A stretch of 64,000 nt of DNA from Zootoca vivipara (Eukaryota). The stretch covers positions 39,742,001 through 39,806,000 of the forward strand of contig NC_083292.1 of assembly GCF_963506605.1 (NCBI RefSeq). The letters run 5' to 3'. Shown one piece after another: positions 577 to 33,769 of this stretch (the stretch's first letter is position 1; every line of letters begins with the position of its first letter). The notes under the pieces are model-generated. The model was not told where the DNA came from. It was given only the letters and a program-made list of their open reading frames with translations, and did no database searches. The position numbers and the translations under genes are program-made.

Positions 577-3500
577 CTTTTCGCCAGTGTGGGTCTGCAG
601 CCTCGGCAGTTTCCCTTCCTGACGTAACTAAGAGCAAAAAAAAACAGAAGAGAGGGTCAAGGATGAGCGAGACAGCTTCCATATTGTCCCACTCAGCCCA
701 GCAGCGCAGGTGGACCGAGGCTACAGGAATACCCATATCCATATTGAGGAGGGGTGTGAAAAAAATTATTCACATTCAGGAGAAAGCAGATAGAGAATCT
801 ATTCTCCCTCGCATATAATACGAGAGCACAGGGCCATGCAATGAAGCTAGATATTGGAAGATTCAGGACAGAACTTTTTCATACAGCACTTTTCATAAAG
901 CACTTTTTCATACAGCAAATAATTAAATGATGCTGCCACAGAAAGTATGTTGATGTCCACTCATCCCTGGAGGTGAAGCCTATCAATGGCTCTGCTCTGC
1001 TGTCACTGCCAGAAACTGCAGGAGATGTGGCTGTTGTGCTTGGGTCCTGCTTGTAGGACACCTGGTTGGCTGCTGTGAGAACAGGATGCTGGACTAGATG
1101 GGCCCCCCTTTGGCCTGATCCAGCAACCAAGGTCTTCCAGTGTTGTCATGGCACTCACCCGGTTTTCCTCCTCAAATATCTTCTTGTTTTCAGGGGAGGC
1201 GTAAACGGCTTTGTTCTGGTTGAGGAGACGGCTGCGGCCAAAAGATTTGGGCACCAGGACGGTGTCGCCTCGACTTCCCACATCTGCAAAAGAGAAACCT
1301 GGAATGTTTCTGCCTGCAAAGCGGGGTAGGAAGTAAAGCGCTCTCCCAGAACATAGGGCAGGAGAGAGAGAGAATGCTCCCTTTACAAAACACACCCCAT
1401 GTACAATTCCTTCCTGGAAATCCCGGCTCAATTTTTTTTAAAAAAACTAAGGCAGGAGAGAAGTTTCCAGCCTGTATCACAACAGTTCCTAACCCGATGT
1501 TCTCCAGATGGTTTCAGACTACCCTCTACTAAAGATACTTGCATATATTTAACTGCACTATCCTAGTATCTATGTTTGGATGAAGATGTGATTTAGTAAA
1601 GTAAAACATGAACAAATAAATATATTGGAGCTATTTTTTGTTTTAATATAAAGCACAAAGTCCACAGAAAGCCATGGACCCCAATGAAGGAAAATCAACT
1701 TAGAAACATGTTTATTGGATGCTTTGCAAGGAATGAGAGGGCAAGTCCTTGCCTCTTGGGAGGGGAGCTACAATCTAGAAATCAGCACAAGGAAGTCAGC
1801 AGGAAGGAGAGGGAGGCAGGAGGAGAACATTTTTATTTTATGTATAAGGTCAAAACTGCAACATAGCCCAGTGGCTGAGTGTGAACCGCAAAGCCCCCAC
1901 CCCCAAATTCCCATGTTCCCTCAGGTGTGAACACCTGAGTCCCTGTGTGCCTGCCCTGTACCAGTCAGGGACACCCAAGAAAGTTGAGTGTTGGAAGATT
2001 CAGACCAAAAAAAGAGAGGGGCAGGCTACTTTTATGCAGTGCATAAAGAATAAACTATGAAACCTGCTGCTACAGGAGGTAGTGATGGCCACCAATTTGG
2101 GTGGCTTTTAAAGAAGGTGGAGCAAATTCGTGGAATATAAGGCTATCCATTGCTCCTAGCCAGCATGGCTGTGAATCCTGGAAACTGCAGCAGGAAAGGG
2201 GGTGCTGTTGTGCTCGGGTCAACCCATCATTTTATTTGTACGCTTTCTAAAGTTGAAACCGTGCTTAAGGCGGCTTGCAGCATGTAAAAAAATGGCAGAT
2301 TCACAAACATAACAAAAGCAGTAATAAACACTAGTTAAAAAAAATCAAAAAGTACACATTGAACAACTGCCACACAAATCGTGAGATCTAAAATAAAGAT
2401 GCAAAAAATTAATGTCCACCACAGCCACACACCCCCCCTCTCTTAAACAACACCCCAGCCCAAGGGTCTGTTCAGCAGTCTCAGGTTTTTGTAGCTGGAG
2501 TCAGTAAGGACTGTGCCATCCCAGGTCAGACGGGAAAAGGCCGGCAAGGCAGAGGGCAGGACTCCCAGGACTCCCAGCCAAGATGGGCCCTGCCTGCAGA
2601 TTTCCCAAAGGCATCTGTTTGGCCACTGCGAGGACAGGATGCTGAGCTAGATGGGCCACTGGCCTGATCCAGCACGCTCTTCTTGTGTTCTTTAAAGGAA
2701 AAAAAGCATGTAGCCCTCCTAAAAAGAAAGTTACGGAGCAACATGGGCAAGTAGCTTCCAAGTGATTTCTGTGAAATGGCCGCAAGTGCGATGAGGCCTC
2801 TGTGTCTATTTTTCCTGGTGATGAGGAATGCTCCCTGCTGAGATAGATAGCAACAACGTCTGCTCTTGTGTGTGTGCGCCCGTGTAAAATCATTATTGTG
2901 TGATTGTCACAATCAGGACTAGCAAGACAACAGCTGACTTCCTAATATGAGGATAAGGTTTTTGGGAGCAGCTGTCTATGTGGAAGCCATTTTGTATTAT
3001 GCCATACCCCCCCCCCAAACAGCCATTTTGTGACTGGCTCCTCCAGCACCCTCTCTCCAACTTCAGCATGTTCCCACTGGTGCAAAAAAGGGCTTGCTAC
3101 CCCTGTGTTAATTCCTTACTCTTTAAAAATGAACCAGGAGCAAAGGCACATGATAATCTGACTTAAGCGTTCACACAAAAGGATGCCTGCCCCAAGCTTA
3201 ATTCGGATTAGCAGGTGCTTCTGCAGAACGGCACCGGGTGCGGGAGTAATAAGGGGAGCAACGTACCGTCCACGGTTTGGGTGAGGATGAGCTCCAGAGG
3301 CTCCTTGGGCTTGTGCTTGGTGTCCTCCAACAAGCGGTAGACCTTATACCGGCGGTGCTTAATCCGAGGCGCCCGGCCCACCTTGCTCAAAGGCACCTTC
3401 CACCAACGCTCCACGATGCACGTTTCCTGAGCAGCGGAGACAGAGAACTTGGGAGAAGCCACCACCACCTCCGCTCTGACACAGCCACTCGGCCTGCCTC

Positions 3501-5796
3501 CTCGCTACTCCCTGTTAGGAAGTCCCATCTCTTAAAACAAATGTTCTAGTCCTCAGGGTTCAAAGACAAGCATAGGAAGCTGCCTTGGACCAAAAGCCAG
3601 TTCCTTTTTTTTTAAAAAAAAAATTATTAGCTATATGCTTATTACATACATACGAAAAGGAATACAATTACATAAATTATAAAAATAAAATCCCAAAAAT
3701 ACAAAAAAAGAACAGACAAAAATCCCAAAAATACAAAGTGGGGAAAATAAAATAAAAAGAATAAGGATATACAAGAAAAAAAGAAAGAAAAGAAAAAAGG
3801 TTGACTTCCTTCAACCACTATACGGGTTCTCTAATCTCATATTTTGGTTGTCTGTAATCATTTTTTACTTTGTGAAGAGGCAATTTGTTTACCTGTGAAC
3901 TTTTTAGCCTAGGCTAAGCCAATCATAATTTTGGGAACCAATTTTCTTCATATAATTTGTAAAGACCTCCAATTCTCTCCTGATTTTTTTCAAAAGCCAG
4001 ATCCTTTGGTCTATCTAGCTCAGGATTGCCTGCACTGACTGGCAGCAGCTCTCCAGGGCTTCAGGCAGGGGACTCTCCCAGAAGTACCTGGAGATGTCAG
4101 GGATTGAACCTGCCACTTTCTGTATGCAAAGCACACGCTCTGTCACTGAGCAATTTTTGGGGGGGGGGAGAGAGAAGGGGCCTATCTCAATGGGACAGGA
4201 TCTGAATTGCATGTGGAAGGTCCCCGGTTCAATCCTCAGCATCTTCAGGTACGTCTGGGAATGTCCCCCTGCCTGGAACCCTGGATAGCCGCTGCCAGCC
4301 AGTGTAGACGCCATGGAGATACACTGACCAAGGTTCAGAGGAAGAATATGGCAGCTTCCCATGTTCCTCTTTGAACCAGCCCTTTACCCAGAACGATGAG
4401 GACTGAAAACTTCCTTTATTTTCAAAGGGCCATAGCTCCATTCTTAAAGGTAGCATGGACATATCTTATATACAGTGCTTTTTTTCTGGGGGTGGGGGAT
4501 GGCACAGGGGTATGCATTCCCCTAAAGATTTTGTGGAACTTTGTACTTTTGTCCATTTACTGTATTTATTTTTCCTGATTTGAACGGTAAAATGGTGGTT
4601 TTCTTGAGTCAAAATGAGAGTACCCCTAAACATTTTCTGTCTCTCTCTGAATTTCCTCACAGTCACCCCACTCCAGAGCAACCCTAGAGCCCCCCATCTG
4701 CATTCTCCCTTCTGCATTTTGTCCCAACTGCATCCCCTTACCGAAAAAAAAGTCTGCTCTTCAAGGCAGCATACACCTAGATTTAAATACTGTACACAGC
4801 AAAACACGACCACGTGCTTATCTTGTGGTCCAAAAGCAACCCCAGAGGACTCCCCCCCCCCCAAAAAAAACACCTTTGCTCTCCCCCATCTCCTTTGTCT
4901 AAACTTACACCCCCTGGGGAATCGGAAGACAGCAGAGACATACCTGCACTGTAAAAATAAAATAAAATAAAACAATTCCTTCCAGTAGCATCTTAGAGAC
5001 CAACTAAGTTTGTCATTGGTATGAGCTTTCATGTGCATGCACACTTCTTTCTGTTTCAGTGTATCTGAAGAAGTGTGCATGCACACGAAAGCTCATACCA
5101 ATGACAACCTTAGTTGGTCTCCAAGGTGCTACTGGAAGGAATTGTTTTATTTTGTTTGGACTACGGCAGACCAAAAAGGCTACCTGCCTGTAACTTGCAC
5201 TGTAAAGACATAAATGCACAGAGTCCATGGAACACCTCTCTGAGCTCCCCCCTAAAAAAAGCAATCCCAGGGCTCCCAATCTGCACTGCCCCCCCCCATC
5301 AACCTATTCATAAAAGCAGCAAACAAAGGCATAGATTTAAGTGTAGATTAAATCAATGCACCCACCCACCCATATGCCCCCTGAGACTCCCCTCCCCCCA
5401 AAGCAACCCCCAGAGACACCCCCAGGTCCACTCCGCCCTGTAATTTCTCTGAAATGACCTCCAAAAGAGTCTCCTCTTAAAGGCTCCCATTTAGATAGAC
5501 ATCAAACACACCCCTGCCCCCTTTCGCCCCCTCAGCAGTCTCCTCAAAGCGACCCCCCCTGCACCCCACCCCCTATATTTCTCCCAAAATCTACCCCTGA
5601 ATTTTAAAATATGTACTAAAATCACTGTCGGATGGGCCCACAAAGCAACCCCCCGGCCCCCCACCTCCCTCTCCCCATGCATTTTACCCCCCTCCTTCCT
5701 CACCAGGGGGGCAGAGAGGCGGAGCCCCCTGCGCACGAGCGGGACCCCCAAGGAGGCCCCTGCCAGGATCAGGCCCCTCGCCGCCGCCGCCAGCAT
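577..5796 (-). CDS. MRPL9: Mitochondrial ribosomal protein L9 (bL9m), coding exons 1-4; gene continues beyond the window start
   Basis: Exons 5796-5704 ([31 protein letters not shown], presequence-like), 3426-3267 ([53 protein letters not shown]), 1283-1159 ([42 protein letters not shown]), 627-577 ([17 protein letters not shown]). All GT-AG with consistent phases 0/1/0; the motifs VERWWKVPL and [10 protein letters not shown] are typical of MRPL9. Confidence 0.95.
4968..5155. mobile_element. Penelope-like element terminal-repeat remnant forming a long inverted repeat, containing a minimal hammerhead ribozyme
   Basis: Arms about 4968-5047 and 5069-5150 are near-perfect reverse complements. 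The right arm has GTAT-CTGAAGA-A-GTGTGCATGCACAC-GAAA-GC-TC-ATAC. Confidence 0.75.
5061..5098 (+). ncRNA. Minimal type I hammerhead ribozyme motif
   Basis: CUGAAGA core 5065-5071, stem II GUGUGC/GCACAC 5073-5086, GAAA 5087-5090, palindromic AGCU in place of stem III, UC cleavage site, stem I GUAU/AUAC. Confidence 0.65.
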
Positions 5797-6862: not shown

Positions 6863-6932
6863 ATACCCACTAGTTATTATTCATATTACTATTGCCACCA
6901 TGATCATCATTAAATTTACTGATGCCCTTGAC

Positions 6933-7315
6933 GCCGGTGCGGTTGGGCTATGTGCCCGCAGGATGGGCAAAGGGGGCAGCAACTGGGGCCCAGCACAGAA
7001 GCCTGGCGAGTAATGGGGTAATGATCTCCCTTGGTTTGAATAGGTTGGACCAGTGGCTCTGGGCTGTAGGCCGGCTCCAAATGTTGGGAAACAAGATCCT
7101 AGTCCTCATGATTGCAGCCGAAAGCTTTGCTGTTGGGCTCTGGGCTCCAGGCAGGCTACCAAGTGATAAGACCACAAGATTCTAGTCCTTAGGATAGCAG
7201 CTAAAACTCTTGCTTGAAACTGAGAGTGGGGTGGGGGGGCAGGATGTTTGGGGGTGTGCGCCGTTTGCTGTGTCCCAAAATCTTGGCTGCGTCCATCCAC
7301 AATGGCCATGCTCTG
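6933..7315 (+). pseudogene. Inverted duplicated fragment of a TDRKH coding exon and the following intron (source about 20846-21450)
   Basis: Colinear with the reverse complement of 20846-21450, e.g. GGTGCGGTTGGGCTA, GCCCAGCACAGAAGCCTGG(C/T)GAGTAATGGGGT, TAGGTTGGACCAGTGGCTCTGGGCTGT, CAGGCAGGCTACCAAGTGATAAGACC. The donor GT has become GC and the exon part has indels. Confidence 0.9.
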
Positions 7316-8129: not shown

Positions 8130-11100
8130 CTGCCCAGCAAAACGCAGCGGAACCGGGCACCCACAACCACCCTTTCTTGGACCAAGAAGGGGGGGATACG
8201 GAACTGCCTTTATCCGCTAGCATTCTCCAGCGCCTCTTTCTGCTCCGTCAGCAAGCACCGCCTTAGATATCGGCGGAAAATGACGCCCAGTGGCAAGAGG
8301 TAAGGGGGGGGCTACCTTGGGCACATTGGTGCCACATAGGTACCTTGGAGGACATGCTCCCCCCCAATATATTGCTAGGCACATATAGCGACCACGGCCA
8401 AGGATCAAGGACTATGGGAGTGGCTGCATGTCCCCCATCCCTGTATTAGGACTGGAAACTTTTGGACCCCCAGATTTTGTTGGGACAGCTGCCTGGAGAT
8501 GAAGAAGCACCATAGTTCAGTGGTGGCACAGCTGCTTGTCATGCAGAAGGCCCCGGGTTCAAGGCCCGGCATCTCCAGGCAGAGCTGTGTCAGAGACATG
8601 TTTTCAGAACGATGAGGACTGGGATCTTGCTTCATTTTTTAAAAGGACACACCTCAGTGGTAGAGCATCTGCCTTGCAAGCAGAAGCTCCCAGGTTCAGT
8701 GCTCCCACCATTTCTAGGTAGGGTTGGAGGAGACCCCTCTCTGAAATCCTATTATGCTGCTGCCAGCCTGTGTAGACAATATTGAGCAAGATGGACCAAT
8801 GGTCTGGCTCCGCTTAAATCCGCTCGTTTCCTATTTCCCTATTAAAGTCAGCCCATTATATTGCAGGTATTAATGTTGCACAGCTTGAAGCAACTGGAAG
8901 CATACAAACTGACTCCTTGTTGCCCAGATCCATAGGTTTGATTTGAGCTTTACTTGCAGGACTTTCTTCAAAACAGAACAAAAACATCAGAGATACATCC
9001 AGATAATTCCATGCACTTACCTTGTGCATGTCTAGCACTGGCTCGGCATCTTAAAAATAACTTGGAACAGGATTGAGATCAAAACTCTTCTCTGTCCCGC
9101 ATTCTAGCCTGAGATTGCATGCTCCTGGAGAGCTTCCTTATTGTATCTTGCTTCCACTCCGACTGGGAACAAAGGACTAAAGACATCTCCCTTTCAAAAT
9201 GAGGATTTGCAACCCAATACCTCCTGTGTGATCTAAAGTTAAACACATTGTCAGAACTAGCAGATAACAGTAACAGTTAATTTCCAACCCACTGAGAAGC
9301 TCAGAGGAAAATCTCCCATGTTAAAGCCTTCAGGCATTCTCCATTTAAATGTGAATTGAGCCATACTTTACACATTATTATTCAGAACTATGGGGCCTAA
9401 TGTCAAGTTTCTAGCCCCTTGTGTTCAAGGCACTTGCCTATTTCAGAACCTGCTTCCCGGGCTTATCCACGCCATCTTCTTTTCTTGTTTCCATTCTGCG
9501 GCACAGCTCAAACCTTACCCAATGTGAGAGCTTGAGTATCCGGCCCCGTTACTGCCCGCAGTGCTCCTGAGTTCGTGGGCGGCTGCCCAGACAGGAGAAG
9601 GAGCCTCGAAGGAGACGAGGCGAGCCTTAAAGAGGTATATAAGGTAGGCTTCTTCTGCCTCAGGCCTTTCTGGCCTTGCATCTGATCAGTATTCATCATT
9701 ACTACTGCTGTCACAATAGACCACCATCTGCTTGCATGATGCTGTACAAAAGTACAGAGGGAGGGTCCCTGCCCCAATGAGCTTACACTCTGAAATTTGA
9801 CAACTGGGCCTTTCCCCCTATTATATATCTACCCCACCTTTTTTCTCCAAAGAGCTGAAGGTAGCATACACAGTTTGCCCCATCAGAGAAATATACTGTG
9901 CTTAAAGTCCTGAAGAGCTGCTGCCAGTCGGTGTAGACAACACTAGGTTTGATGGACTCGTGGTCTGACTCGATACAAGGCAGATTTCTCCAGGGAGAAT
10001 ATATTCATTCCGTCTTTATTGACAAAATTTAGATAAAAATCACAAAAAGGGGTGGGTGGGAACATAAAATATTTGCAATACAGACCTATTGAAGGCATAT
10101 AAACCATATAAAAGACTCAGTAGCCACCATTAAGTAGTTTTAAATTAGACTTTGAAAAAAATCTCAACTAAATAGTCTTAAACCATCTCAGTAGTTTTTT
10201 TTGGGGGGGGGGCAATATCACCCCTCAGCGGATATTGGATTACAGATTCTTTGCAAATAGATACTTTAAGCTTCAAAGGAGTCGCCAGCAGGTCTCTGTG
10301 AAGAGTGTCAATTTCACAAACTGAGTTATTGGGGGGGGGGGAGGTTGTGGACTCTCACCTCTTGTTTTGCTAGTTTCCTTCCTTTGACTGGTTTAAATTC
10401 ATTGCATGGGATTGGCCTATACAGTGGTACCTCGGTTTATGAACACAATTGGTTCTGGAAGCCTGTTCATAAACTGAAGCGTTCATAAACTGAAGCGAAC
10501 TTTCCCATTGAAAGTAATGGAAAGTGGATTAATCCGTTCCAGACGGGTCCGCGAAGTACTCAACCTGAAGCGTACTTAACCCAAAGCATGGGTGTAATTG
10601 GTTCCGGAAGTCTGTTGATAAACTGAAGCGTTCATAAACTGAAGCGAACTTTCCCTTTGAAAGTAATGGAAAGTGAATTAATCTGTTCCAGATGGGTCCA
10701 TGGCGTTCGTAAACTGAAAATTCGTAAACCGAGGTGTTCATAAACCAAGGTTCCACTGTATATGACCCTCTGGGGTCCCTTCCAAACTCTACAATTTTCT
10801 AGCGAAATGTTGCCCTAACTTGTGCAAACCAGCTGACATCTCCCTCTTGCGCAGGGATGGAGGCATTTTAGCAAATCAATCCATCAATCACCGGCACTCA
10901 CCACCTGAAAGTTGGAAAGAAGGGGGATTTTGCTAAGGTGTTTTCTAACCAGTAGTTGCAAACCTTTCATCTAAAAACGCCACAGGCTGGGAATCTCACT
11001 GTTTTCGCCGGCGAGCGCCAACGTCCCGACCAGCCGGTACAGTTGGACTTCCATTTTGCCCACGGCAGCCAGGGGGTCAGCCACTGGCACGGCCTCCTCC

Positions 11101-13230
11101 AGGCACGCACGGTTTTCCTCGACACGCCTCACCTTGCCCTGGACTGCAACAGCCGCGAGAGGTGAGAGCAATTTCCTGCTGCAACTGGGTGTCAGAAACG
11201 GGTGGCTTTGTCACCCAACTAAGTTGCACGCGGAGTAGACCCACTGAATGTCCCTACATTGGCTGTGCCTGTTCTTTTCAAGACGTCTGCTCTGAGCAGG
11301 ACTAACGTTGGAAACAGCCCAGCGTTTTCCAGCAACTTTAGAGACAACCACTCGGCCAGGTTCCAGCTCTTGTGGGGGGAAATATCGGAAAGCGAGGGAG
11401 GCACTAGTTCAAAACCAAAGGAACCCAAACCCAAGGCCCTGAGGATTTATTTATGGGCAGAGATGCTGCTTAGGGCTATCGCCTGCACCTGACCGTGGGA
11501 ACCTAATATTTACATAAGGAGAAAAAAAGTTGACCCCCCCCCAAAAGGCTGGGGTTGAACTTCAGAAACAGCCCAGAGTTCTGGGCATGCTCAGTGATAA
11601 TGGGATGCTAACTTTTGCGTAATGGAAGAACTGGAGGGAGGGAGGAAATGGAATAGAGTATCTTCAACAAGAGCTCCTTGCCCTGCAATTTTTTGCTGCA
11701 GCTAACATCAGTAGATTTCCCTCTACCGAAATGGTCGATTTGAACCACTAGCAAACTTGGTGCTATGCTTTAGGCTCCGTAAAAAATTGTGGGGTGTGTT
11801 CAAAAGGAGTGGGGTCAGATTGGGGCACTTATGTCTGGACCTCTAATTTAAAATGAAAACAACAAAACCCACATTTTTCTGTATGTAGAAATCTAGCATG
11901 TCAGGGAGAAGAGTAGCCTTTTCTGTGACAGTCTGGTTTTCTAGGTCCAGGGAATTCTTTGGATGGATTCAGTCATGGGAGCTCTCACCCACAATTCAGT
12001 GGTACAGGTCAGGTTGAACACCTTACTGAAGACTAGTCCCTTTGCAAGCCCTGCTTGCAAAAGAACAGCACCCTTAATAATAAGCGCTTAATATGGATCC
12101 TGTGGCCGTTTCTGCTCCTAGCCTGACTGCAACGCTGGAATACGTGGAAGAAAACACAGAGGCGGACCAGGTGCTTGTTAACTTCCACAAGTCCCGACGG
12201 GACAGGGGTAAGAAAAAAAAAATAATCCCCTTGCTAACAGAATCTGGGTTTTGAGTCCTGGACTATTCCACATGCCAGAAATCTGGAAATGATATAGAAA
12301 AGGGCAAGGGTGTGTGTGTCCCAATTCCAAATTTGGGCTTTTATTAGGCCAGAAAAACCATCATAAAAAAGCATGCTAGGGCCATAGCATTTTGGTCGAG
12401 CGTCATCCCTAGTTTGGTCACCAGGTAGGTCCAGGAGAGAGCTTTGCCTGAAACTGCAGAGCTGCTGCCGGTCAGTGCAGTGTCCTTATGTTCTGATTCA
12501 AAGCCACATTTTTTCCAGAACCATGAGGACTAGAATCTTTACTTTATTTCAAGGGTGTCCCAGGTTCAATGCCCAACGGCATCTCCAAGTAGGGTCAGAA
12601 TCTACCTGTCCTTAGAGTGTGAGGTGGAAGGCAGAGTGAAAACCAGTTTGCTACTGGACCAGTCTCAAGATTCTCATGCTCATTCAAGCTTGGTGTCCAA
12701 ATATGCTTCACCACGATCCTCTGGCGGGGCGCTTTCAGAGGTTGCTTGCAACCCTCTGAGATTCAGTCAGCTCTGTGGCCCTGCGGAACTTCTTGCCACT
12801 AGAGGTTGGGCAGGAATAATCCCTGTCTTGCTTTAGATGTCTCCTGAGAACTGTTAATCTGACAGGCCTCTGCCGTGTGGTTTTCTTTTTACAGCCAGCA
12901 CCGATGGATGTTTCTACTGCTCTTAATGGAAGCGTGTATATACACTGCATTTTTATGAAAGTGTGGCTTGACAAACATGGAGAAATTGGATAAACCAGAG
13001 GAAAGGCTCTGGAGTGCGGGGAAAGATCATCTTGCCCTTGGTTTCCTAATCATCTTCTTTTTCTCCCCTCGCTCGAAGGAGACTTGCTACGAGCCTTTGG
13101 CTTCTTGGGTTTCAAGCTCATGCAGCCGGATCACCCTTCCCTTCCCCCCTGGGAGGACGTCATCTTCATGGCTTACCCCATGGAACGAGAACTTTACCAA
13201 CCGGAGGAGAATGAGAAGTGGAGGACCTGA
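8130..13230 (+). CDS. OAZ3: Ornithine decarboxylase antizyme 3; ORF1 and ORF2 joined by a programmed +1 ribosomal frameshift
   Basis: Exons 8130-8299, 9507-9643, 10986-11161, 12122-12207, 13079-13230, all GT-AG and in phase. ORF1 ends ...RPRYCPQCS-TGA (9568-9570). The +1 frame reads EFVGGCPDRRRSLEGDEASLKEVYK/AGNLTVFAGERQRPDQPVQLDFHF...HWHGLL...LDCNSRE/SLTATLEYVEENTEADQVLVNFHKSRRDR/GDLLRAFGFLGFKLMQPDHPSLPPWEDVIFMAYPMERE...KWRT*. About 239 aa from CUG 8130 or 189 aa from ATG 8280. Position between MRPL9 and TDRKH matches the mammalian order. Confidence 0.93.
9559..9571 (+). promoter_or_regulatory. OAZ3: Antizyme +1 frameshift site CAG TGC TCC TGA G
   Basis: UCC-UGA is the canonical vertebrate antizyme shift site. 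The +1 frame is open for exactly 25 codons to the donor at 9644 and splices in phase into AGNLTV. Confidence 0.92.
10422..10758. mobile_element. Tc1/mariner (Tigger-like) MITE in OAZ3 intron 2
   Basis: TIRs CAGTGGTACCTCGGTTTATGAAC / GTTCATAAACCAAGGTTCCACTG, TA on both flanks, and an internal direct duplication of about 120 bp. Confidence 0.85.
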
Positions 13231-13372
13231 AACCAGACACACTGGGGAGGCAGGATGGGGCTGTTCTTGGCCAACAGGCTCCCTGAATGAGCAGGTCACC
13301 GATTCCCCCAGGGAGTGGCATTAAACTGGCACCACAGCTCGATCATCTTGTTGGTTTGTTTGTTTACAGGGC

Positions 13373-13378
13373 AATAAA
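13373..13378 (+). terminator. Candidate polyadenylation signal of OAZ3
   Basis: AATAAA about 140 nt after the OAZ3 stop codon. Confidence 0.6.
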
Positions 13379-24200: not shown

Positions 24201-27200
24201 TATAATATCCAACAGGTCAGTTGATTAAATCCTCTTTTTTTAAAGGAGCACCCAAACACCCAGGCTAGAGGTGACAGCCTCTTTCCTCCGCGTGGGGCCC
24301 TCACCGTAACGGCTGCAGCTTCTCCAAAGGAGCCTCTCCGTTGTCACCAAAGTCCACGTAGTAGAGGTCCATGTTTCCATTGCCCAAAGTGCCAAGGACT
24401 CTGGCTCTGTACCAGGCGCGGTCTTCGGGGTAGGGGGCGGCTACGATGTCCCCCACGTTCACCTTCAGGGGTTCCGGCTGGGGAGCCTGAGGAACAGAGG
24501 CACTGGGAGGGGACCCTCGCACACCCACACTCTAGCACTGCAAAAGTACCCAGAGTGCAGAGCGGGTGGGCAAGGGAACAAAGGGGCTGCCCTCCTCCCC
24601 CCCACGCCAGGGGCCTCCCCCACCGCACAAAGCCTCACCGAAAGGCTGCTGCCGTAATACTGCGTCATTTCGTGGGTCAGCTTGTCTAGTTGGAAGGTGC
24701 GCGAGCCGATAATCTGGATCCAGAAGTGGTTGGGGGTCTCGGAGGCCGAGACGTAGACCTCCAGGTGCTCGTTGGTGTGGAAGCTGAAGTCTGGGCTGGG
24801 GACTGAGGACCCAGGAGGCGGAAAGTGAGGAGCAGAGGCCGGCCCTCTCCCTAAACCCTCCCAGATGGAGGGCCGGATCGGTCAGGGTCTGACTTGTAGC
24901 TTCCCTCCCCCCATCTCTTCCTCCCTAGGCAACCCCACAACGATGGCGCCTCCTTGGGAGCCCCAGCCCTAGATAAGATTGCAGCTGTGGGAAATCTATT
25001 TCAACCTATCCTACCAAAAAAGGCACTAGTCCTCATGATTACAGAGAACCTCCTGGAAGAGGGTGAGCACACGGCAGAGAGTCAACTACTTTATTTGTCA
25101 AAGTTAAGTCGCTTCTACAGCTCTAGATATCTACGTGCACCAATCTAATGACTAGTCCAGGCATAGGCAAACTCGGCTCTCCAGATGCTATGAGACTACA
25201 ATTCCCATCATCCCTGACCACAGGTCCTGCTAGCTAGGGATGATGGGAGTTGTAGTCCCAAAACATCTGGAGGGCCGAGTTTGCCTATGCCTGGACTAGG
25301 CAGTTATAAAAGTAAAATTATTATTATTATTAATTATTATTATTATTATTAATCCTCATCATCATTATTCCCTGGTGGGAAGTCTATACATGAAACAATG
25401 TAACTGTTTGTTTTTTTAAAAATTAATTTGGCTTTTCAGAATAAAATTTTAGTCACATATCGAACATACAACATAAAAACAAGATTCCAAGGAATCTCTG
25501 GAACTTCACTCCTCCCCTTCGTGGGTCCTATTGTTAATCATTTCCTCCTGCATCTTTTATAATACAGTTGTGCCTTGGAAGTCGTTCAAATGCCTTGCAA
25601 CTTGAACGTTTTGGCTTCCAAACGCCGCAAACCCAGAAGTGAATGTTCCGGTTTGCGAATGTTCTTTTGGAAGCCAAACGTCTGACGCAGCTTCCACAGC
25701 TTCTGATTGGCTGCAGGAGCTTCCTGCAGCCAATTGGAAGCCACGCTTTGGTTTCCAAACATTTTGGAAGTTGGACAGACTTCTGGAACGGATTCCGTTC
25801 GACTTCCGAGGTACAACTGTACAGTGGAACCTTGGGTTGTGAACGTGATCTGTGCGGGAGGCACGTTTGCAACCCGCAGTGTTCGCAACCCAAGGTGTGA
25901 CTAATCCAAATCTTGTCTCTCCATTGTATCCAAAATTCACCATTAAATTAAAAGTGATATTCCAAACCTACTAACAATTTCAACTGTTTACAACGGTCTT
26001 TGAGGTCAAGCTATAAATTTCCCTCATTCCTTATTAAAATCTTCCAGATTTTCGATTCTTTAGGTAAAGATAAAGGGACCCCCGACCATTAGGTCCAGTC
26101 GTGACCGACTCTGGGGTTGCGGCGCTCATCTCGCGTTATGGGCCGAGGGAACCGGCGTACAGCTTCCAGGTCATGTGGCCAGCATGACAAAGCCGCTTCT
26201 GGCAAACCAGAGCAGCACATGGAAATGCCATTTACCTTCTTGCTTGGAGCGGTTCCTATTTATCTACTTGCACTTTCACATGCTTTCGAACTGCTAGGTT
26301 GGCAGGAGCTGGGACTGAGCAACGGGAGCTCACCCCGTCGCAGGGATTCGAACCGCCGACCTTCTGATCAGCAAGCCCTAGGCTCTGTGGTTTAACCCAC
26401 AGCGCCACCTGCGTCCGATTCTTTAATTTGAAGCTAATTTGTAAAAAAATTGGAAATGCAATAAAAATTATACTGTGTGTAGGGGTGTGGGGAAAGATTC
26501 TAGTCCTCACAACTGAATGAACTCAGCGCCACCAGGTATGGGGCTGGCCACCATCTTAAGCCAGCTTCTAAAGCGTCAAGCAAGAGATCAGACAAGCTGA
26601 CAGAGAAGCCGACCAACAGTTGATAATTAAATGGAACCTCCAGCTCGAGGCCGCCTATCTCTGAAAGAGCTTGCTGGACAACAGCGCAGGAGGGGAAGGG
26701 TTTTTTTTTTTTTTTTTTAAAAAGATATAAAGACTGCCTCGTTATGCTTACCTTCGAAAGCATAGCTCAGACAAGAGGTTTCCGATAAGGACTCGGAGGA
26801 TGAGCCATCTTCGCTCCTCGGCTCATCGGGGGGATATTCTGGGATCTTCCCAGTGGCTCCTTCGTGGTGTGGGGTCCCCAGCGGCTGATGGAAAGCTTCT
26901 TCGGTGCAAGGGGGACCCCGCCTCCGGTCGCCGCTGCCGCCAGCGTCCTCCTTCCTCGTGCCCAGAGGCTGCTTCCGCTGGGACCGGGCCATAGCCGCGT
27001 GCGAGAGCTTCTTGTGGAAGGCCTCGTCCTCCAAAACCTTTTCCGCGATCAGTTTCTGCAGGAGATTTGGAATATGAGTAGCAAAGGAGGCTGGTGGACT
27101 GGGTAGGGGTTCCCTTTGTCTAAGCAGGCTGTGGTCGGAACTGGCTCCTCCCAATATAGTTCAGGTTGCAGCCTGGCTGGCAAAGGAATTGCCCCCCTGC

Positions 27201-30200
27201 ACTCCTGGCTTGAACCGCACTTGCTCCTTCCCCAGGTCTTGCCCACCTGGAAGGATGGCCCCCAGGGAGGGGTACTTTTTAACAGGGTGGATTTGATTTA
27301 AATCAGGGGCAGACACCACATATTTACCTCCTCTAGAACCCCAAAATTGTAGTTTAACCCTCACGTAACTACAACTCCCAGCAACTACAACTCTTTGGAA
27401 GGGGTTTGGGGCGCCCTGCTTAGAAAGGAGGTTATGCCTGCAGCTTCCGAGGGTATAAGGCAGGCCTCCTCGGGGACAGGTTCCCAGTACATGGCGATAT
27501 TTAATTGGGGCCGCCCACCACGACCTCACAGAACGACGCCAGCAGCTGGGGAGCAGGGCAGGGGGCTCACCTTAGCTGCTAGCACCTCCTTGCGGGTCCC
27601 AGAGAGCGTGATCTGGCGGTTGAGCGAAAAACTCCCTTCACGGTCGCAATCGATCTTGGCCCCCGTGCTCTGGTGGATGGCTCGCACCGTCTCCCCGCCC
27701 CTGCCTGGGGGACGAGAAAAGGTTAGCAGAAACCGCAAGGAACGTGTCCTGTCCCTCCACTGTCCCCTGAGGGCACCTCCATTGCAGCACTGGGAGAGAT
27801 TGGAAGAGGAAGGCTCCCTCCATCAGCTTCGCTAGGGGCCCATTTGGTCATTTGAGCAGCCGTTTAGAAATCGGTGCCTGAGTGTTGGCTGTTGTTTTCC
27901 TCTACCCTCCCAGTTCCTCTTCCCTTGTGTGCTTTTCTTTGTGTGTGTCTTTTTTAAAAAAAAGATCACAAGCTTGGAGCTAGGGATTGTCTTCTTTTGA
28001 CCGTATATAAACCACTCCTGGAGCCTTTATGCCTGAAGAAGAGGGCACCAAGTTCTCAAAATAAATAATAACGAACTATATAGGCCCAAAGAGGCTAATC
28101 TACAGGTTGCAAAATATTTGCCCTGTTAACTTTCTGCTCATTTCCTCCTCGGGTGATGAATCTGCAAACCCCAACATGGGGGGCAAAGGCAGAGTCCAGC
28201 AAAGTGCCAAGTGGCTGATCAGAGTTTGCAGAGCCTGGGGCTTTGCAGACACTGCTGGCCTGTGCAGATGATAAAATTTAAAAGTAATATTGAAATATCT
28301 AAAGGGCTATCATGTGGAGCAAGCTTGTTTCCTGCAGGACCCGAAGCAATGGATTCAAGTGACAAGAAAGGAGATTCTGTCCAAAGATCAGGGAGAACAT
28401 TCTGGCAGCAAGAGCCATTCAATAGGGGAAGAGATGGCTTTGGAAGGTGGGGGACTCTCCTCTAGGGGAGGTTGCTAAACAGAGTCGGGTGGCCACCTGT
28501 CGGGGATACCTCAGCCGTGCTTCCTGCTTTGCAGGGGGTTGGACTAGATGGCCCCTGGGGTCCCTTTCCAACTCTACAATTCTATGTTTCTATGAAATAA
28601 TATAGATGGTCCTCGCCCTCATTTTACCCTCAACACAGCAAGGCACATTAGGATGAGGCATTGTGACTGGATCAGTTGTCACCCAGTGAGCTTCATGGCT
28701 AAGCGGGGACTTGAACCCTTGTCTCCCAGGTCCGAGTCCAAGACTCTAACCACTAGGCCACACCAACTCCCAACAGTAATGGCACCTGAAGTTCCCTTGC
28801 TGTTGGTTTATAAGCCCAGGGCAGGCGCCAAGCGTGCAGGATTCCCGCCATCCAATCAAGACAAAGCACAATAAAGTTTTGGGGCATTCAGAGGACGCAG
28901 AACAGGGATTACCAATGATGCGCCCCACGGCACGCTGGGGCACAAGGATCTTTTCCGTCACGGCCAAGTTCTCCTCCAGGATCTGGTGGATGGCGGCTTT
29001 GGCCTTGCACACCTGGACGGCGGAGCCCCAGATGCGGATCAGGCGCTCCTCGCCAGAATCTTCCACGTCGACATCAATGCGGGCCTGGGTGTCCTTCCGC
29101 AGCTGCAGAGAGGGAGGACAGGGGCTCTTCAGCCTCGGCAATCTCCAAAACAGCGACGGCTAGGCCGAGTCAGACTGCGCCCGGTTCCCAGCAGCCTCTA
29201 TGGTGGGGGCCTCATCCAATTTTATACACAACGGCAGAGGCCCCATTCATACCAGCGTGATGATTAAACGGTCACCGCTTCCCTCAAAGGATTCTGGGAG
29301 CTGTTGGTTGTTCAGAGTGATATGAGTTGTTAGGGGACACCCTCCCCCCATAGCTACAATTCCCAAAAGACGGACGGGTTGTTAAAGCACTCTGGGAATT
29401 GCAGCTCTGTGAAGGTTTATCCTCAGCACCCTCAAACTACAGCTCCCAGAATTCTTTGGGTAACTAATTCTAGCCTGGTCCCTCTATCCTCTTACCTGCT
29501 AATTTCTGCAAGGTGATGCAGAAACGAAGGCTGCATTCACACCAAACATTTACAGCACCACGATACCAATTTAAGCAGTCATGGCTTCCCTCAAAAGAAT
29601 CCTGGGGGCCGCAGTTAGTTAAGCAAGCCGTTAGGAGACCCCCCCGCTGCTCCCCTCATATAGCTACCCTTTCCTGCCACTACAGATCCCCTCTTTGTGG
29701 GGAACTCTGGGGAATCATAACCCTGCAAAGGCCTTAACCAGGGGTCGGCAAGGCTTACCAGGCATAGGCTGGATCACTCCAACGGAAATCCTGTGGGCCA
29801 GACAGGCGGAGTGCGACACCGGAAATCGCGTCTCTGCATGTACGTGGCGCCGGAAATCGCTTCTGCAGATGCCCAGATGCTGAAAATTGCACCTGTGCAG
29901 AAGCGATTTCTGTTGTCTGGGCATGTGCAGAAGCGATTTCCGGGGCCGTGGAAGAGAATCCCCACTCTGCGCTGTGCCAGTTTAGTGCAGTGCGCGGGAA
30001 CTTGCCAAGCGGGTGGCTTGGTTCATGGGCGGCTCGTGGGCCAGTTAAACGACCTCCGTGGGCCACTTCCGGCCCATGGGCCACAGGTTGGGGACCCCTG
30101 GCCTTCACCCAGAGATGTGGGGGTCAGGCCTGAGGTGCCGTTTTCTCCCTCCCCATTGAAGTGTTGGGCGGAGGGCAGCGGTGAATTCACACAGCTCCAG

Positions 30201-31777
30201 GAATCAGCAAACCTACCTGCTTGACGTTGGCTCCGTGGCGCCCGATGAGCAGCTTCACGGCATCCTTCGGGATCTTCATCTCCACCTGGAGCTCCTCCTC
30301 GCCCACAAACGTCAGCCGCTCCTCTGGAAGCCCCAGCCAGAGAGAAAGACACACGCACTGAGCGATTAGGACCCAAAACTCCCCCCTCCTTTTCAGGCAG
30401 CTGTCTCTCCTTGGCAGCCATGAGCCCATCACCCCAGGGAAGAGATGGTGGCAGGCCTCCCTGCCCGCTCGTGAGCTTGGGGATCTGCCCATCTAATAGC
30501 CACAAAGGCTCTGTGCCACTTCCGCTGCGGGAGGCAGGGTGCCACTGAATGCCCGTTGCCAGGAACAGCAAGCGGGGAGATGTAGCTGCTGTGGTGGGGG
30601 GTCCTACTTGTGGGTTTCCCTTGGGGGCATCTGGCTGGCCGGCGTGAGAACAGGCTGCGGGGCTAGAAGGGCCCCCTTTGGCCTGATCTTAAGATCTTAT
30701 AGAATTAGAGGAATTCTCTATCAATGGCTGCTGGCCATGACTGCTATACTCTGTTCTCCACACCACAGTGGGGTGGGGTGCTGCTCTTGCTTTTGAGAGC
30801 CTGCTTATGGGTTGGACCCTGTGATGTGGGCTAGATGGGCCTGATCCAGCTTCAGGGCTCCTGTAATGTTCTTGACCAACAATGCTACCCCCGCGGAGCA
30901 GGCTAGGAAATAAGGATGGGGAACGGTGAACCCAGCCTATTTTTATTAGTACTGTTAATAATTCACACGCCGGCTGCGCTTTCCCTCTGCTGTTGCAAGT
31001 CTAGACTCCTTCATGATGGAGTCTCCTTGAAACAGCACGGTGCTTTTCCAAAAGGGAAAACAAACTCTTCCACATTGCAAAGGGTTGGACTAGATGAGTC
31101 TTTGGGTTCCTTCCAGCTCCCCAATTCTGTATGAACCCGTCTATAGAGACCCAGCACTTTCCTTGCCGGGGTGAGGCAGATCAGTAAGTTGCAAGAGCAG
31201 AGAGCAAGCACCAAAGCAGTCCTCGCTCTCGCCGGGATTTCAAAAGGGGCCCTTGAATTCCTGGTTCCGACCCAACACGTGCCATGTGGGGAGTCATGAG
31301 GCTCCACCGGACATAGCTGGACTCAACTTCCAAGCAAGAACAGGCTGGAAGCACTTAAAAACTCTGTTTGCTACCCACCGGGTTTCACCAGCGACCCCGC
31401 CCTCCGCCTGAGCCCAAGGGCGGAAAGATGTCAATATGGGATGTGTGTACAAAATGACAGCAAGTGTCAAGCAAATGCTCGAGGGCAGGAGCAGCTATTG
31501 GAAGCTTTCCCAGAATGAGCAGCACACACAGACAGGAAAGGAGTACAGCAGGCAGACGCAATCGATTGTTCAAAGCCCAGTTCCACCCACGCAGCAGATG
31601 CCGGTCGCACAGCTGCGCTTCCCACCTCCTTCCGACCCAGGGCGCACACCCACCTTGGCTCTCCCGGTAACGGCGGTACAGGATGTACAGAATAGCCCCG
31701 CTGGCGGGGACACCGAGCGCCAGGGCCACCTTCTGCAGCGTTGTCAGACTGCTCCAGGAGCCCTTCTCAGCTGCCAT
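18242..31777 (-). CDS. TDRKH: Tudor and KH domain-containing protein (TDRD2), piRNA biogenesis factor, about 733 aa
   Basis: Coding exons 31777-31654, 30323-30217, 29102-28913, 27704-27571, 27055-26752, 24802-24639, 24486-24305, 22994-22930, 21826-21675, 21469-21347, 20485-20389, 18801-18242. All GT-AG and phase-consistent (2202 nt). N-terminal TM anchor (LQKVALALGVPASGAILYILY), two KH GxxG loops (IGRHGAN, IGRGGET), Tudor core (WYRARV...YYVDFGDN), LTLSCLSLS. The last exon is the least certain. Confidence 0.95.
20980..21164. mobile_element. hAT-type MITE in a TDRKH intron
   Basis: TIRs CAGGGGTCGGCAA / TTGCCGACCCCTG; TSD GACTAGAA/GACTACAA; the empty site is present in the duplicate near 7180. 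Confidence 0.9.
24028..24155. mobile_element. hAT-type MITE
   Basis: TIRs CAGGCTTCCTCAACCTCGG / CCGAGGTCGAGGAAGCCTG; perfect TSD CTTTACAC. Confidence 0.9.
25158..25293. mobile_element. hAT-type MITE
   Basis: TIRs CAGGCATAGGCAAACTCGG / CCGAGTTTGCCTATGCCTG; TSD GACTAGTC/GACTAGGC. Confidence 0.88.
25565..25903. mobile_element. Two abutting Tc1/mariner-type MITEs (25565-25819 and 25822-about 25903) sharing a TA, inside an AT-rich LINE remnant
   Basis: CAGTTGTGCCTTGGAAGTCG / CGACTTCCGAGGTACAACTG, then TA, then CAGTGGAACCTTGGGTTG ... CAACCCAAGG. Confidence 0.75.
26062..26415 (-). mobile_element. Sauria SINE
   Basis: Reverse complement of the 13999-14357 family (AGGTAAAGATAAAGGGACCCC ... GTTTAACCCACAGCGCCACCTGCGTCC). 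Confidence 0.85.
28290..28593 (+). mobile_element. CR1-type LINE 3' fragment
   Basis: KYLKGYH remnant and 3' end GGGTTGGACTAGATG...CCAACTCTACAATTCTATG, shared with 53880-54390. Confidence 0.7.
29739..30100. mobile_element. hAT-type non-autonomous element, longer relative of 20980-21164
   Basis: TIRs CAGGGGTCGGCAA / TTGGGGACCCCTG; TSD GCCTTAAC/GCCTTCAC; internal short inverted repeats (GGAAATCGCTTCTGC / GCAGAAGCGATTTC). Confidence 0.85.
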
Positions 31778-33769
31778 GGCCCCTGCTGGAGGCACCCTAA
31801 ACGGGAAGGGGAAAAATTTCCTCAGCTGCATCTCCCCACGGGAGAGGCCGACCAAGTACATTGCCCCGCAGGGAAGCAGCAGCAGCAGACGGGATCTGCC
31901 GGACAGGGACCGCAGCTCCACAGTGGAAGCAACTCGGAGGACGCTTGAGAAATGACTTTGCTTCTCAAGGGTTTGGACAGCTGCCTGGAGCCGACTGCAG
32001 CCAACCTTGCTGTCCCAGGCGGAGGTTTCCCCTCCCCACCCCACCTTGGGAGAAGGTGCCAGGTTTTGTGTTTCAAAGAGGACGGACGAGCCAAGCCAGG
32101 GTGTGTGTAAATCAATGTGGTTTCAGAAATGCACTTTCAGGGCTGAGTCCCACCATCCACTTCTGGCAGAACAGACCAAGAATCCATTTAAACCAGGCGT
32201 GGGGAACTCAATGCGGCCCTCTAGAACCCTGCATCTGGCCCTCAAATTTTTCCAAGCCACACCCTTCTATGGCCTTGTTTTCTACCCAAGGTTTTCTGCT
32301 TTTTGCCTGGCTGGAAAGTTTTCTTGAACTCTTGAGCACGCCTCTGGATGAAGGGTAGGGGCATCTTGAGTGGGTGCAGAAACCAGAAGCCAGTTACATC
32401 TGTTCTTGTACCCAGTTCTGCCCACCACTGGCATGCGGCCCTTGGAAGGTTTCCGAAGGGGGAATGTGGCCCTCTGGGTAAAACACAGGTTTTTCCCGCC
32501 CACAACAGCACCATGTTCCCATGAAGCTTCACACACACACACACACACACGGGTTGAGGATTGTCTTCCTTCCTTCCTATGTCCCCAGCATCTAACACTC
32601 AGAGGTATACTGCCTCAGTATCTGGAGGTTCCACTCCTAACTAGAATAAAGACCAAAAGAGCCCTGCAGGGTTGGAATGAAGGACTGCATTGTCTCCCAC
32701 AATGGCCAGGCCACATAACCCTGGGAACTGCAAAAGCAATGCTTGAAGCACTGCCCTATTTTAGTCCCTCATTGCAGCAAGTGGAATTCACATACCGAGC
32801 ACTCCGAATGTGGACATTCTGCCTCACTTTCATGACCAATGTCTTATTATTTCCCCTCCTCAGTGAATTGGTTTGATGACCTTTTAAGAACATCCAAGTC
32901 TGTGGCACTCGCCATACCTGGTGGCAGCGAGTTCCACAGCTCAGGACACACCCTGCACAGCAGCCCGTTTTCTTCTGTATGCCCCAAACCTTCTGCCCAC
33001 CAGTGTCCCTGAGTCTCTACCAACACCCTGAAATGTTCTAGCAATGCAAGGAAGGTTTTTGGTGTTTTTTGCCATGCAAGCCCCTGCATCACAGATGGGG
33101 GCCTTTGGGACTCCAGATGCTACTGAAACAGTCCCCATCAGTTGCAGATGAGAGTTGCAACCCCGCAACATCTGGTCGCAGCTGCCTCACCATTGCTCTG
33201 AACTTCTGTGCAAATAGCGGCCATTAACCCAAATGCCTGTTGTTGCTTTTTTATTTAAACTACCCCAGAGCTGAGGGACCGAAAACATCGCAAAAGCCAT
33301 GGCCCAACGTTTGAAATGTTTGTTGAAACCGCAAGATACATAACATACATCTCTATCCTTTTGAAATCTGCTCTTTGCTCAGCAACACACAACTTTCTCC
33401 CCAACCCCACAGAGCCCTTCTCAGCCACACCCTGTGAGGGCTTTGGCATCCCCCCCCCCTCAATGTAGCTATTGGGGGGGCTTCTTGGAAATGGGTGTTC
33501 TGTTGGAGCAGAAAACTGCAGGTTCAAGTAATTATTAAAATGTAGGGCTTTTAAGAAGAAAATTGGTACGACCTTTTCCTAGATTGGAAAGTATTTGCGT
33601 CCCACTTTATTAAAAATGTGATACGTTGCTTGCATCCAGAAACATTTAAAAAATTTATAGCACCTATTAATTACACTCAGCCTAGAGAGAGTCATCTCCA
33701 AGCAATGGACAGCAAGACTTTCTATAAAGTCTATGGAATAGGCTCCCTTCTGCGAACCAGTTGGTATCT

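What the first reader, a model, noticed from the sequence alone, without database searches (positions are those of the whole stretch)
8130..13230. Hidden complete OAZ3 in a lizard, with an intact +1 frameshift site
Seen: five phase-consistent exons, ORF1 ending CAG TGC TCC TGA G, and a +1 ORF2 with the antizyme domain. The ORF track shows only one exon in the right frame. Known: antizymes are made by polyamine-stimulated +1 frameshifting at UCC-UGA, and OAZ3 is the spermatid-specific paralog characterised mostly in mammals. Inference: OAZ3, its recoding site and its position between MRPL9 and TDRKH predate the mammal-reptile split. Automated annotation is likely to truncate it or call it a pseudogene.
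Basis: partly seen in the sequence, partly recalled or inferred. Interest (0 to 1): 0.78.

Follow-up and report, generated by a model that had tools for sequence, protein, structure and literature searches.

The report
Lizard OAZ3 gene, already annotated
This is a real, complete antizyme 3 gene of a lacertid lizard that needs a +1 ribosomal frameshift to be read, but public databases already list it with the same exons, so it is an ordinary confirmation.

Summary
Five exons with GT..AG borders and consistent phases lie at 8280-8299, 9507-9643, 10986-11161, 12122-12207 and 13079-13230. ORF1 ends CAG TGC TCC TGA G at 9559-9571, and the antizyme domain continues in the +1 frame.

The gene is not hidden. 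Every exon peptide is an exact substring, in order, of XP_034953524.1, [quoted passage not shown]. That public model uses the same junctions and the same shift.

OAZ3 is also named in at least 14 other lizards, in snakes, tuatara, turtles, salamanders and caecilians. One of these is a RefSeq NP_ record for Anolis carolinensis.

MRPL9 lies upstream and TDRKH downstream, both on the minus strand, in the order of a goat gene list.

Three RNA runs of unknown tissue gave essentially no reads on the exons, so splicing, expression and frameshifting remain inferred.

Two side points. The in-frame stretch upstream of the ATG resembles the CUG-started extension of mammalian OAZ3. The first exon of the public model lies partly in a repeat.

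Verdict: correct reading, already known, low interest.

The parts
8130..8279 (+). Candidate N-terminal extension of ORF1. It is in frame with the ATG at 8280. It has no in-frame ATG, GTG or TTG after the in-frame stop at 8100-8102, and in-frame CTG codons lie at 8115 and 8130.
   Evidence: One search gives the translation. One search aligns LSWTKKGGIRNCLYP...RLRYRRKM with the extension of mammal, turtle and gecko OAZ3. Whether it is translated is inferred.
8280..8299 (+). Exon 1, coding part from the ATG (MTPSGK plus 2 bases). Donor GT at 8300.
9507..9643 (+). Exon 2. It holds the end of ORF1 in frame 0 and the start of ORF2 in frame +1.
9562..9571 (+). +1 frameshift site TGC TCC TGA G. The stop of ORF1 is at 9568-9570.
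   Evidence: In P0066 residue S73 is followed by E74 from the +1 frame.
10986..11161 (+). Exon 3 (AGNLTVF...DCNSRE).
   Evidence: One search gives E = 1.8e-24..
12122..12207 (+). Exon 4, the middle of the ODC_AZ domain.
   Evidence: One search gives ODC_AZ E = 0.016 for the exon alone..
13079..13230 (+). Exon 5, the end of the ODC_AZ domain. Stop TGA at 13228-13230.
   Evidence: One search gives ODC_AZ E = 0.0024 for the exon alone..
13373..13378 (+). AATAAA, a likely polyadenylation signal 143 bases after the stop.
   Evidence: Read. No read support.
6900..7009 (+). Upstream exon used by the public model XP_034953524.1 (MIIIKFTDALDAG...). It is spliced to 8252, so it skips the conserved extension. 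Its 3' part lies in a dispersed repeat, which makes it doubtful.
1003..5796 (-). MRPL9, the neighbour upstream. It points away from OAZ3.
   Evidence: bL9m_N E = 1.2e-17 at 3208-3468 and Ribosomal_L9_N E = 1.6e-07 at 1003-1431. The first exon near 5796 is judged by eye and has no Pfam hit.
24301..31780 (-). TDRKH exons, the neighbour downstream.
   Evidence: Tudor E = 1.6e-12 at 24301-24528, KH_1 at 28746-29141 and at 30187-30492. The N-terminal exon is judged by eye.

Best explanation
The stretch is the OAZ3 (ornithine decarboxylase antizyme 3) gene of a lacertid lizard, almost certainly Zootoca vivipara. It has five coding exons.

Proposed mechanism: ribosomes start in a short ORF1, either at the ATG at 8280 or further 5' at a CUG, probably the one at 8130. 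They reach UCC UGA at 9565-9570. A fraction of them slip +1 and go on in ORF2, which encodes the ODC-binding antizyme domain. The rest stop and release the short ORF1 peptide.

Shown here: the gene structure, the frame change, the family, orthology by best hits and by gene order, and identity with a public annotation.

Inferred from work on mammalian OAZ3 (reviews PMC1874602 and PMC5009743): that frameshifting happens, that polyamines stimulate it, and that expression is in post-meiotic male germ cells.
For: - Exon-by-exon translation and splice sites.
The single residues between them equal the split codons.
- Exon 3 alone finds 19 proteins at E <= 0.001. Of the 10 looked up, 8 are named OAZ3 and 2 carry no name.
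- A profile of 16 OAZ3 proteins returns 100 listed hits, and every named one that is not 'hypothetical' or 'unnamed' is OAZ3.
- P0066 scores 196 bits (53% identity) against Tupaia OAZ3 NP_001277561.1, but only 80 bits against human-type antizyme 1 chains of the PDB.
- Pfam ODC_AZ scores 52 bits, above the cut-off of 24.2.
- Gene order is MRPL9 / OAZ3 / TDRKH, as in the goat list ...RIIAD1, MRPL9, OAZ3, TDRKH, LINGO4....
- A tree of 41 OAZ3 proteins follows the species tree, with lacertids at 100/100 support.
- No Rfam family matches at the shift site, and there is no robust local fold. This fits the published view that OAZ3 lacks the stimulators of antizymes 1 and 2 (PMC1874602 and PMC5009743, passages read).
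Against: - There is no transcript evidence. RNA runs X6-X8 gave zero depth in every bin that holds an exon, apart from 0.21 in one bin of X8. Their tissue is unknown, only about 6 in 100 of each run was read, and no expressed gene at this locus served as a control.
- No OAZ1 or OAZ2 sequences could be brought in, so the tree has no paralog outgroup.
- Frameshifting itself is untested.
- The public record carries the label LOW QUALITY PROTEIN. That shows the pipeline treated the shift as a possible sequence error, not as recoding.
Confidence: 0.92

Rival explanations
1. The stop is bypassed by splicing, not by frameshifting. A 67-base mini-intron from GT at 9524 to AG at 9589-9590 would join ...ACC CAA T to AC AGG AGA... 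and put ORF2 in frame without the TGA.
For: The GT and the AG are there, and removing 67 bases shifts the frame by +1. The public Podarcis lilfordi model P0036 reads ...KSSTLTQH/RRRSLEG..., which is exactly this bypass.
Against: - It would delete ESLSIRPRYCPQCSEFVGGCPD. The core of this, RPR.C.QCSE, is kept from mammals to lizards in the alignment.
- The acceptor follows a G-rich stretch with no pyrimidine tract.
- 67 bases is very short for a vertebrate intron (own knowledge).
- The RefSeq NP_ Anolis record and the Gnomon models keep the region.
- No read shows the joint, though no read covers the exon at all.
Confidence: 0.03
2. It is a decaying or silent gene copy. The open frames persist but nothing is made.
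For: Zero RNA depth on the exons in X6-X8 and X9. The public label is LOW QUALITY PROTEIN.
Against: - All splice sites, both frames and the shift site are intact.
- Exons 3-5 are 88-100% identical to Lacerta agilis (P0029) and Podarcis lilfordi (P0036), and still 53% identical overall to a mammal.
- The tree follows the species tree without a long branch for this row: 0.067 against a median of 0.13.
- OAZ3 is germ-cell specific in mammals (PMC1874602), so silence in runs of unknown tissue is expected.
Confidence: 0.04
3. It is an OAZ1 or OAZ2 paralog and not OAZ3.
For: None beyond the shared ODC_AZ domain. The Atlas lists an antizyme 1 cluster at 0.95, just behind antizyme 3 at 0.96.
Against: - All named best hits are OAZ3.
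- The score is only 80 bits to antizyme 1 chains against 196 bits to mammalian OAZ3.
- The gene order is that of OAZ3.
- The OAZ3-type N-terminal extension is present.
- No Rfam match lies near the shift site.
Confidence: 0.01

Closest known systems
XP_034953524.1, LOW QUALITY PROTEIN: ornithine decarboxylase antizyme 3 [Zootoca vivipara] (P0066)
   Same: Identical from KHRLRYRRKMTPSGK to the C-terminal KWRT. It uses the same four junctions and the same +1 shift after ...PQCS.
   Different: Its first 36 residues come from an upstream exon at 6900-7009 that lies partly in a dispersed repeat. That exon is spliced to 8252 and skips the conserved extension. I think this N-terminus is doubtful.
NP_001278927.1, ornithine decarboxylase antizyme 3 [Anolis carolinensis] (P0072)
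   Same: A lizard OAZ3 read as an ORF1-ORF2 fusion from an ATG (MTPFDKSS...RPRYCLQCSEFEGGCPDRRR...). It is 68% identical to P0066 in alignment A2.
   Different: It comes from another family of lizards (iguanian). Its C-terminal tail is longer.
Mammalian OAZ3 / antizyme 3 (for example Tupaia NP_001277561.1, P0020)
   Same: 53% identity over 187 residues. It has the shift context ...C.QCS then E..., the N-terminal extension upstream of the ATG, and neighbours MRPL9 and TDRKH. No stimulatory RNA structure is apparent (PMC1874602).
   Different: The upstream 'pseudo-frameshift site' GN-UCC-UGC described for mammals (PMC1874602) is not in exon 2 here (read). The residues 8 to 5 codons before the site are P R Y C here, against P R S C in human and P C S C in mouse (Table 2 of PMC5009743).
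Antizyme 1 (PDB 4zgz_B, 5bwa_B, 4zgy_B, 1zo0_A)
   Same: Same ODC_AZ fold family, with E = 1.2e-21 over residues 131-229. Same UCC-UGA +1 shift principle.
   Different: Much lower similarity. Antizyme 1 has 5' modules and a 3' pseudoknot (PMC1874602), and neither was found here.

Membership tests
Ornithine decarboxylase antizyme (Pfam PF02100 ODC_AZ) | ODC_AZ domain above the curated cut-off | tested here: met
   The exons alone stay under the cut-off of 24.2 bits (15.6 and 18.2 bits). The identical public protein P0066 scores 52 bits, E = 7.8e-14. PDB antizyme 1 chains match at E = 1.2e-21.
Ornithine decarboxylase antizyme (Pfam PF02100 ODC_AZ) | Two overlapping ORFs, with ORF1 ending UCC UGA and ORF2 in the +1 frame | tested here: met
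   The frame change of the homologous peptide is located at 9567/9569.
Ornithine decarboxylase antizyme (Pfam PF02100 ODC_AZ) | +1 frameshifting really occurs and responds to polyamines | not testable with these tools
   This needs a reporter assay or Ribo-seq. It is inferred from mammalian antizymes (PMC1874602, PMC5009743).
OAZ3 / antizyme 3 subfamily | Closest relatives are OAZ3, not OAZ1/2 | tested here: met
   The limit is that no OAZ1/2 sequences were in hand for a joint tree. The tree holds OAZ3 only.
OAZ3 / antizyme 3 subfamily | Position between MRPL9 and TDRKH | tested here: met
   (Pfam on neighbouring exons). The mammalian order comes from a goat gene list in PMC9902602.
OAZ3 / antizyme 3 subfamily | Conserved in-frame extension 5' of the ATG without an AUG (CUG start in mammals) | tested here: inconclusive
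   The extension is conserved at the protein level, is open from 8103, and has no ATG, GTG or TTG and two CTG codons. Initiation there is not shown.
OAZ3 / antizyme 3 subfamily | No antizyme 1/2-type 5' modules or 3' pseudoknot | tested here: met
   No Rfam match up to E = 10 near 9500-9650. That Rfam holds a model of the antizyme frameshift element is recalled, not seen in the output. Fold z-scores are -0.81 for the hairpin just 3' of UGA, 0.01 for 9530-9600, -1.96 for 9571-9643 and -3.0 for 9565-9643.
OAZ3 / antizyme 3 subfamily | Expression restricted to post-meiotic male germ cells | not testable with these tools
   RNA runs X6-X8 of unknown tissue show no reads on the exons. No testis run was identified.

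The most novel reading that the evidence does not exclude
The lizard OAZ3 mRNA carries two non-standard decoding events, as proposed for mammals: initiation at a CUG (8130, perhaps 8115) that adds about 50 conserved residues, and the +1 frameshift at 9565-9570. On this reading the public RefSeq N-terminus, an upstream exon partly derived from a repeat, is wrong, and the ORF1 peptide with its extension has been kept since before the mammal-reptile split. A further open point is that no bird, crocodilian, frog or fish row appeared among the 100 best OAZ3 profile hits. That would fit loss of OAZ3 in those lines.
Probability: 0.45. Interest if true: 0.3.

Novelty: already known. Interest (0 to 1): 0.1.

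Why it matters
It matters little as a discovery. The gene, its exons and the shift are in RefSeq for this species, and lizard OAZ3 is on record as a RefSeq NP_ entry for Anolis.

It has some practical value:
- It shows that a programmed frameshift is still labelled LOW QUALITY PROTEIN in 15 of the 25 squamate rows (my count).
- It shows that other pipelines truncate the gene or splice round the site.
- It suggests that the annotated N-terminus in this species is probably wrong.

The reviews I could read still call OAZ3 'the third mammalian antizyme' (PMC1874602 of 2007, PMC5009743 of 2016). A short note on its tetrapod-wide range and its apparent absence from birds might therefore still be useful.

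Tried and rejected
- RNA support. Runs X6-X8 (raw RNA reads) and X9 (contigs) were laid on 8130-13330. Nothing fell on the exons, and only the dispersed repeat in intron 2 (10420-10760) was covered. This gives no evidence either way on junctions.
- A 3' stimulatory structure. The 79 bases from the shift site fold with z = -3.0 (1 of 200 shuffles as good), which looked promising. But the hairpin just after UGA alone has z = -0.81 (42 of 200), 9571-9643 has z = -1.96 (7 of 200), and 9530-9600 has z = 0.01 (85 of 200). I dropped it as not robust. Covariation could not be tested because no DNA of other lizards was obtainable.
- A 5' structure. 9507-9570 has z = -0.35, so nothing there.
- Rfam gave five weak matches in the introns, among them tRNA-like hits at 8495-8684 that probably come from a tRNA-derived SINE, and none at the shift site.
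- The motif TGCTCCTGA is not rarer than chance in the window.
- A tree with OAZ1/OAZ2 was not possible. The profile search lists at most 100 rows and all were OAZ3. I did not type the antizyme 1 letters printed into a search, because they are human-type PDB chains and not stored proteins.
- Paper searches for lizard or reptile OAZ3 found no paper that describes it. PMC12539209 mentions OAZ3 only for mice. PMC12901780 was seen only as a search listing.
- The paper on RefSeq curation of antizyme genes (Rajput and others, 2015) is recalled only. It is not held and I saw none of its text.
- Supplements, for example Figures S1 and S2 of PMC1874602, are closed. They may list reptile antizymes or the alignment of the extension.
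Full report
**What is there.**
- An ATG at 8280 opens MTPSGK, followed by a donor GT at 8300.
- Exon 2 (9507-9643) continues frame 0 as SNLTQCESLSIRPRYCPQCS and stops at TGA 9568-9570, just after TCC.
- From 9569 the +1 frame reads EFVGGCPDRRRSLEGDEASLKEVYK.
- Exons 3 (10986-11161), 4 (12122-12207) and 5 (13079-13230) follow with GT..AG introns. Their phases fit: the split codons read S, S and G.
- An AATAAA lies 143 bases after the stop.

**Is it more than chance?** Yes.
- Exon 3 alone (58 residues) found 19 proteins at E <= 0.001 among 1.84 billion representatives, the best at 1.8e-24.
- Exons 4 and 5 alone gave weak ODC_AZ matches under Pfam's cut-off. Exon 3 and the ORF2 part of exon 2 gave none.
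- The nine-base shift motif is by itself no rarer than chance: 1 found, 1.05 expected.
- The meaningful fact is that the OAZ3-like peptide changes frame exactly there.

**What it is.**
- Of the ten hits that I looked up, eight are named ornithine decarboxylase antizyme 3: three snakes, a turtle, platypus, a caecilian and two mammals.
- A search with the snake protein P0004 gave 46 hits. These include OAZ3 of 14 lizard taxa, tuatara and turtles.
- The two closest to the window's exons are lacertid: Lacerta agilis and Podarcis lilfordi.
- Listing the Lacerta cluster brought up XP_034953524.1, 'LOW QUALITY PROTEIN: ornithine decarboxylase antizyme 3 [Zootoca vivipara]' (P0066).
- All six exon peptides of the window model, plus two peptides from the public model's own 5' end, are exact substrings of P0066. 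They lie in order, separated by single residues that equal the split codons. S73 from frame 0 is followed directly by E74 from frame +1.
- So the window is almost certainly Zootoca vivipara. The gene is not hidden.

**Is it OAZ3 and not OAZ1/2?**
- A profile of 16 OAZ3 proteins returned 100 listed rows, all OAZ3 or unnamed fragments.
- P0066 scores 196 bits (53% identity) with Tupaia OAZ3, against 80 bits with antizyme 1 chains of the PDB.
- Pfam ODC_AZ is met on P0066 at 52 bits.
- The protein atlas puts an 'antizyme 3' cluster first, narrowly.
- Upstream on the minus strand lie MRPL9 exons (bL9m_N 1.2e-17, Ribosomal_L9_N 1.6e-07). Downstream on the minus strand lie TDRKH exons (Tudor 1.6e-12, two KH_1).
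- A goat gene list gives the order ...MRPL9, OAZ3, TDRKH, LINGO4... (PMC9902602, passage read).
- A tree of 41 OAZ3 proteins follows the species tree: lacertids 100/100, geckos at the base of the squamates, tuatara next to squamates, and turtles, mammals and amphibians apart.
- I left out of that tree all fragments, the primate rows and most mammals.
- The tree has no OAZ1/2 outgroup, because none could be fetched.

**How it most likely works.** By analogy with mammalian OAZ3, ribosomes translate ORF1. At UCC UGA a fraction shifts +1 and makes the full antizyme, while the rest terminate.
- The reviews I read in passages say three things about OAZ3: frameshifting is required, no stimulatory signals are apparent, and efficiency is low in cultured cells (PMC1874602; PMC5009743).
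- My tests agree with 'no apparent signals'. There is no Rfam match near the site. The fold z-scores are -0.81, 0.01 and -0.35 for the immediate contexts, against -3.0 for one 79-base window and -1.96 for 9571-9643.
- The mammalian 'pseudo-frameshift site' UCC-UGC is not present in exon 2.
- Everything about actual shifting, polyamine response and germ-cell expression is inferred.

**Results against, or missing.**
- The three raw RNA runs with this species label gave zero depth in every bin that holds an exon, apart from 0.21 in one bin of X8. X9 gave none.
- Their tissue is unknown, and about 6 in 100 of each run was read. With the single read-laying run spent, I could not lay an expressed gene as a control.
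I therefore could not compare DNA of other lizards, so no dN/dS and no covariation test was possible.

**A rival worth naming.** GT at 9524 and AG at 9589-9590 bound a 67-base piece whose removal would put ORF2 in frame without the TGA. The Podarcis lilfordi model does exactly that. The piece encodes the most conserved part of ORF1 and the start of ORF2, and its acceptor has no pyrimidine tract. I give this reading 3%.

**The 5' end.**
- Frame 0 is open from 8103 back from the ATG. It has no ATG, GTG or TTG, and it has CTG codons at 8115 and 8130.
- Its translation, LPSKTQRNRAPTTTLSWTKKGGIRNCLYP...RLRYRRKM, aligns with the extension of mammalian, turtle and gecko OAZ3: LSYIKRGKTRNCLYP...ITLREKM.
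- The 2007 review proposes a conserved CUG start for that extension in mammals. The 2016 review says that much initiation on antizyme 3 mRNA is at such an in-frame CUG.
My alignment supports conservation of the peptide but not its translation.
- The public model instead starts in an exon at 6900-7009 spliced to 8252, which skips the conserved part.
- The 3' part of that exon lies in a repeat that recurs at 21367-20846 on the other strand.
- In Podarcis muralis an upstream ATG is in frame. In this window the matching ATG at 8032 is out of frame.

**Novelty.** Already known.
- Beyond this species' own record, the tools returned a RefSeq NP_ record for Anolis carolinensis OAZ3 (NP_001278927.1). 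That NP_ records are reviewed by curators is my own knowledge.
- They also returned named OAZ3 in salamanders and caecilians, so the gene predates amniotes.
- In the held paper library I found no description of reptile OAZ3.
- A 2015 paper on RefSeq curation of antizymes is recalled but could not be read.
- Supplements are closed and may bear on this.

**Verdict.** The gene is ordinary and already annotated. Interest 0.1.

Noticed in passing
window 8103-8279: The stretch in frame with the OAZ3 ATG is open, has no ATG, GTG or TTG, and has CTG codons at 8115 and 8130. It encodes a peptide like the CUG-started extension of mammalian, turtle and gecko OAZ3. The snakes in the alignment do not show it.
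   Followed up: partly
window 6900-7009 and 6985-7315 versus 21367-20846: The first coding exon of the public Zootoca OAZ3 model overlaps a dispersed repeat that is about 86% identical to a copy on the other strand inside the TDRKH region. The annotated N-terminus may be an artefact.
   Followed up: partly
one search hit list (no window coordinates): Among the 100 best hits of an OAZ3 profile there are mammals, squamates, tuatara, turtles, salamanders and caecilians, but no bird, crocodilian, frog or fish. OAZ3 may have been lost in archosaurs and anurans.
   Followed up: no
window 10420-10760 (intron 2 of OAZ3): A dispersed repeat with an internal duplication, highly represented in the RNA runs (depth up to about 900 in X6). 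The reads are 95-99% alike and run on into many different flanks, so they come from other copies.
   Followed up: no
window 8495-8684 (intron 1): Weak tRNA-like and tmRNA-like Rfam matches under the gathering scores. This is probably a tRNA-derived SINE.
   Followed up: no
window 6175-6636 (+), 44025-44961 (-) and 41213-44008 (+): Retroelement remains. Short ORFs at 6175-6636 resemble those at 44025-44961 (...YRWYLTP.K.AK...CW.C...). A 931-residue ORF at 41213-44008 looks like an endonuclease plus reverse transcriptase of a LINE. This is judged by eye only.
   Followed up: no
window 13228-13330: The stop of OAZ3 is TGA in this window. The Lacerta and Podarcis models read on for 27-32 more residues that match the window's 3' UTR in other frames. 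The C-terminus therefore differs among lacertids, or their models contain further corrections.
   Followed up: no
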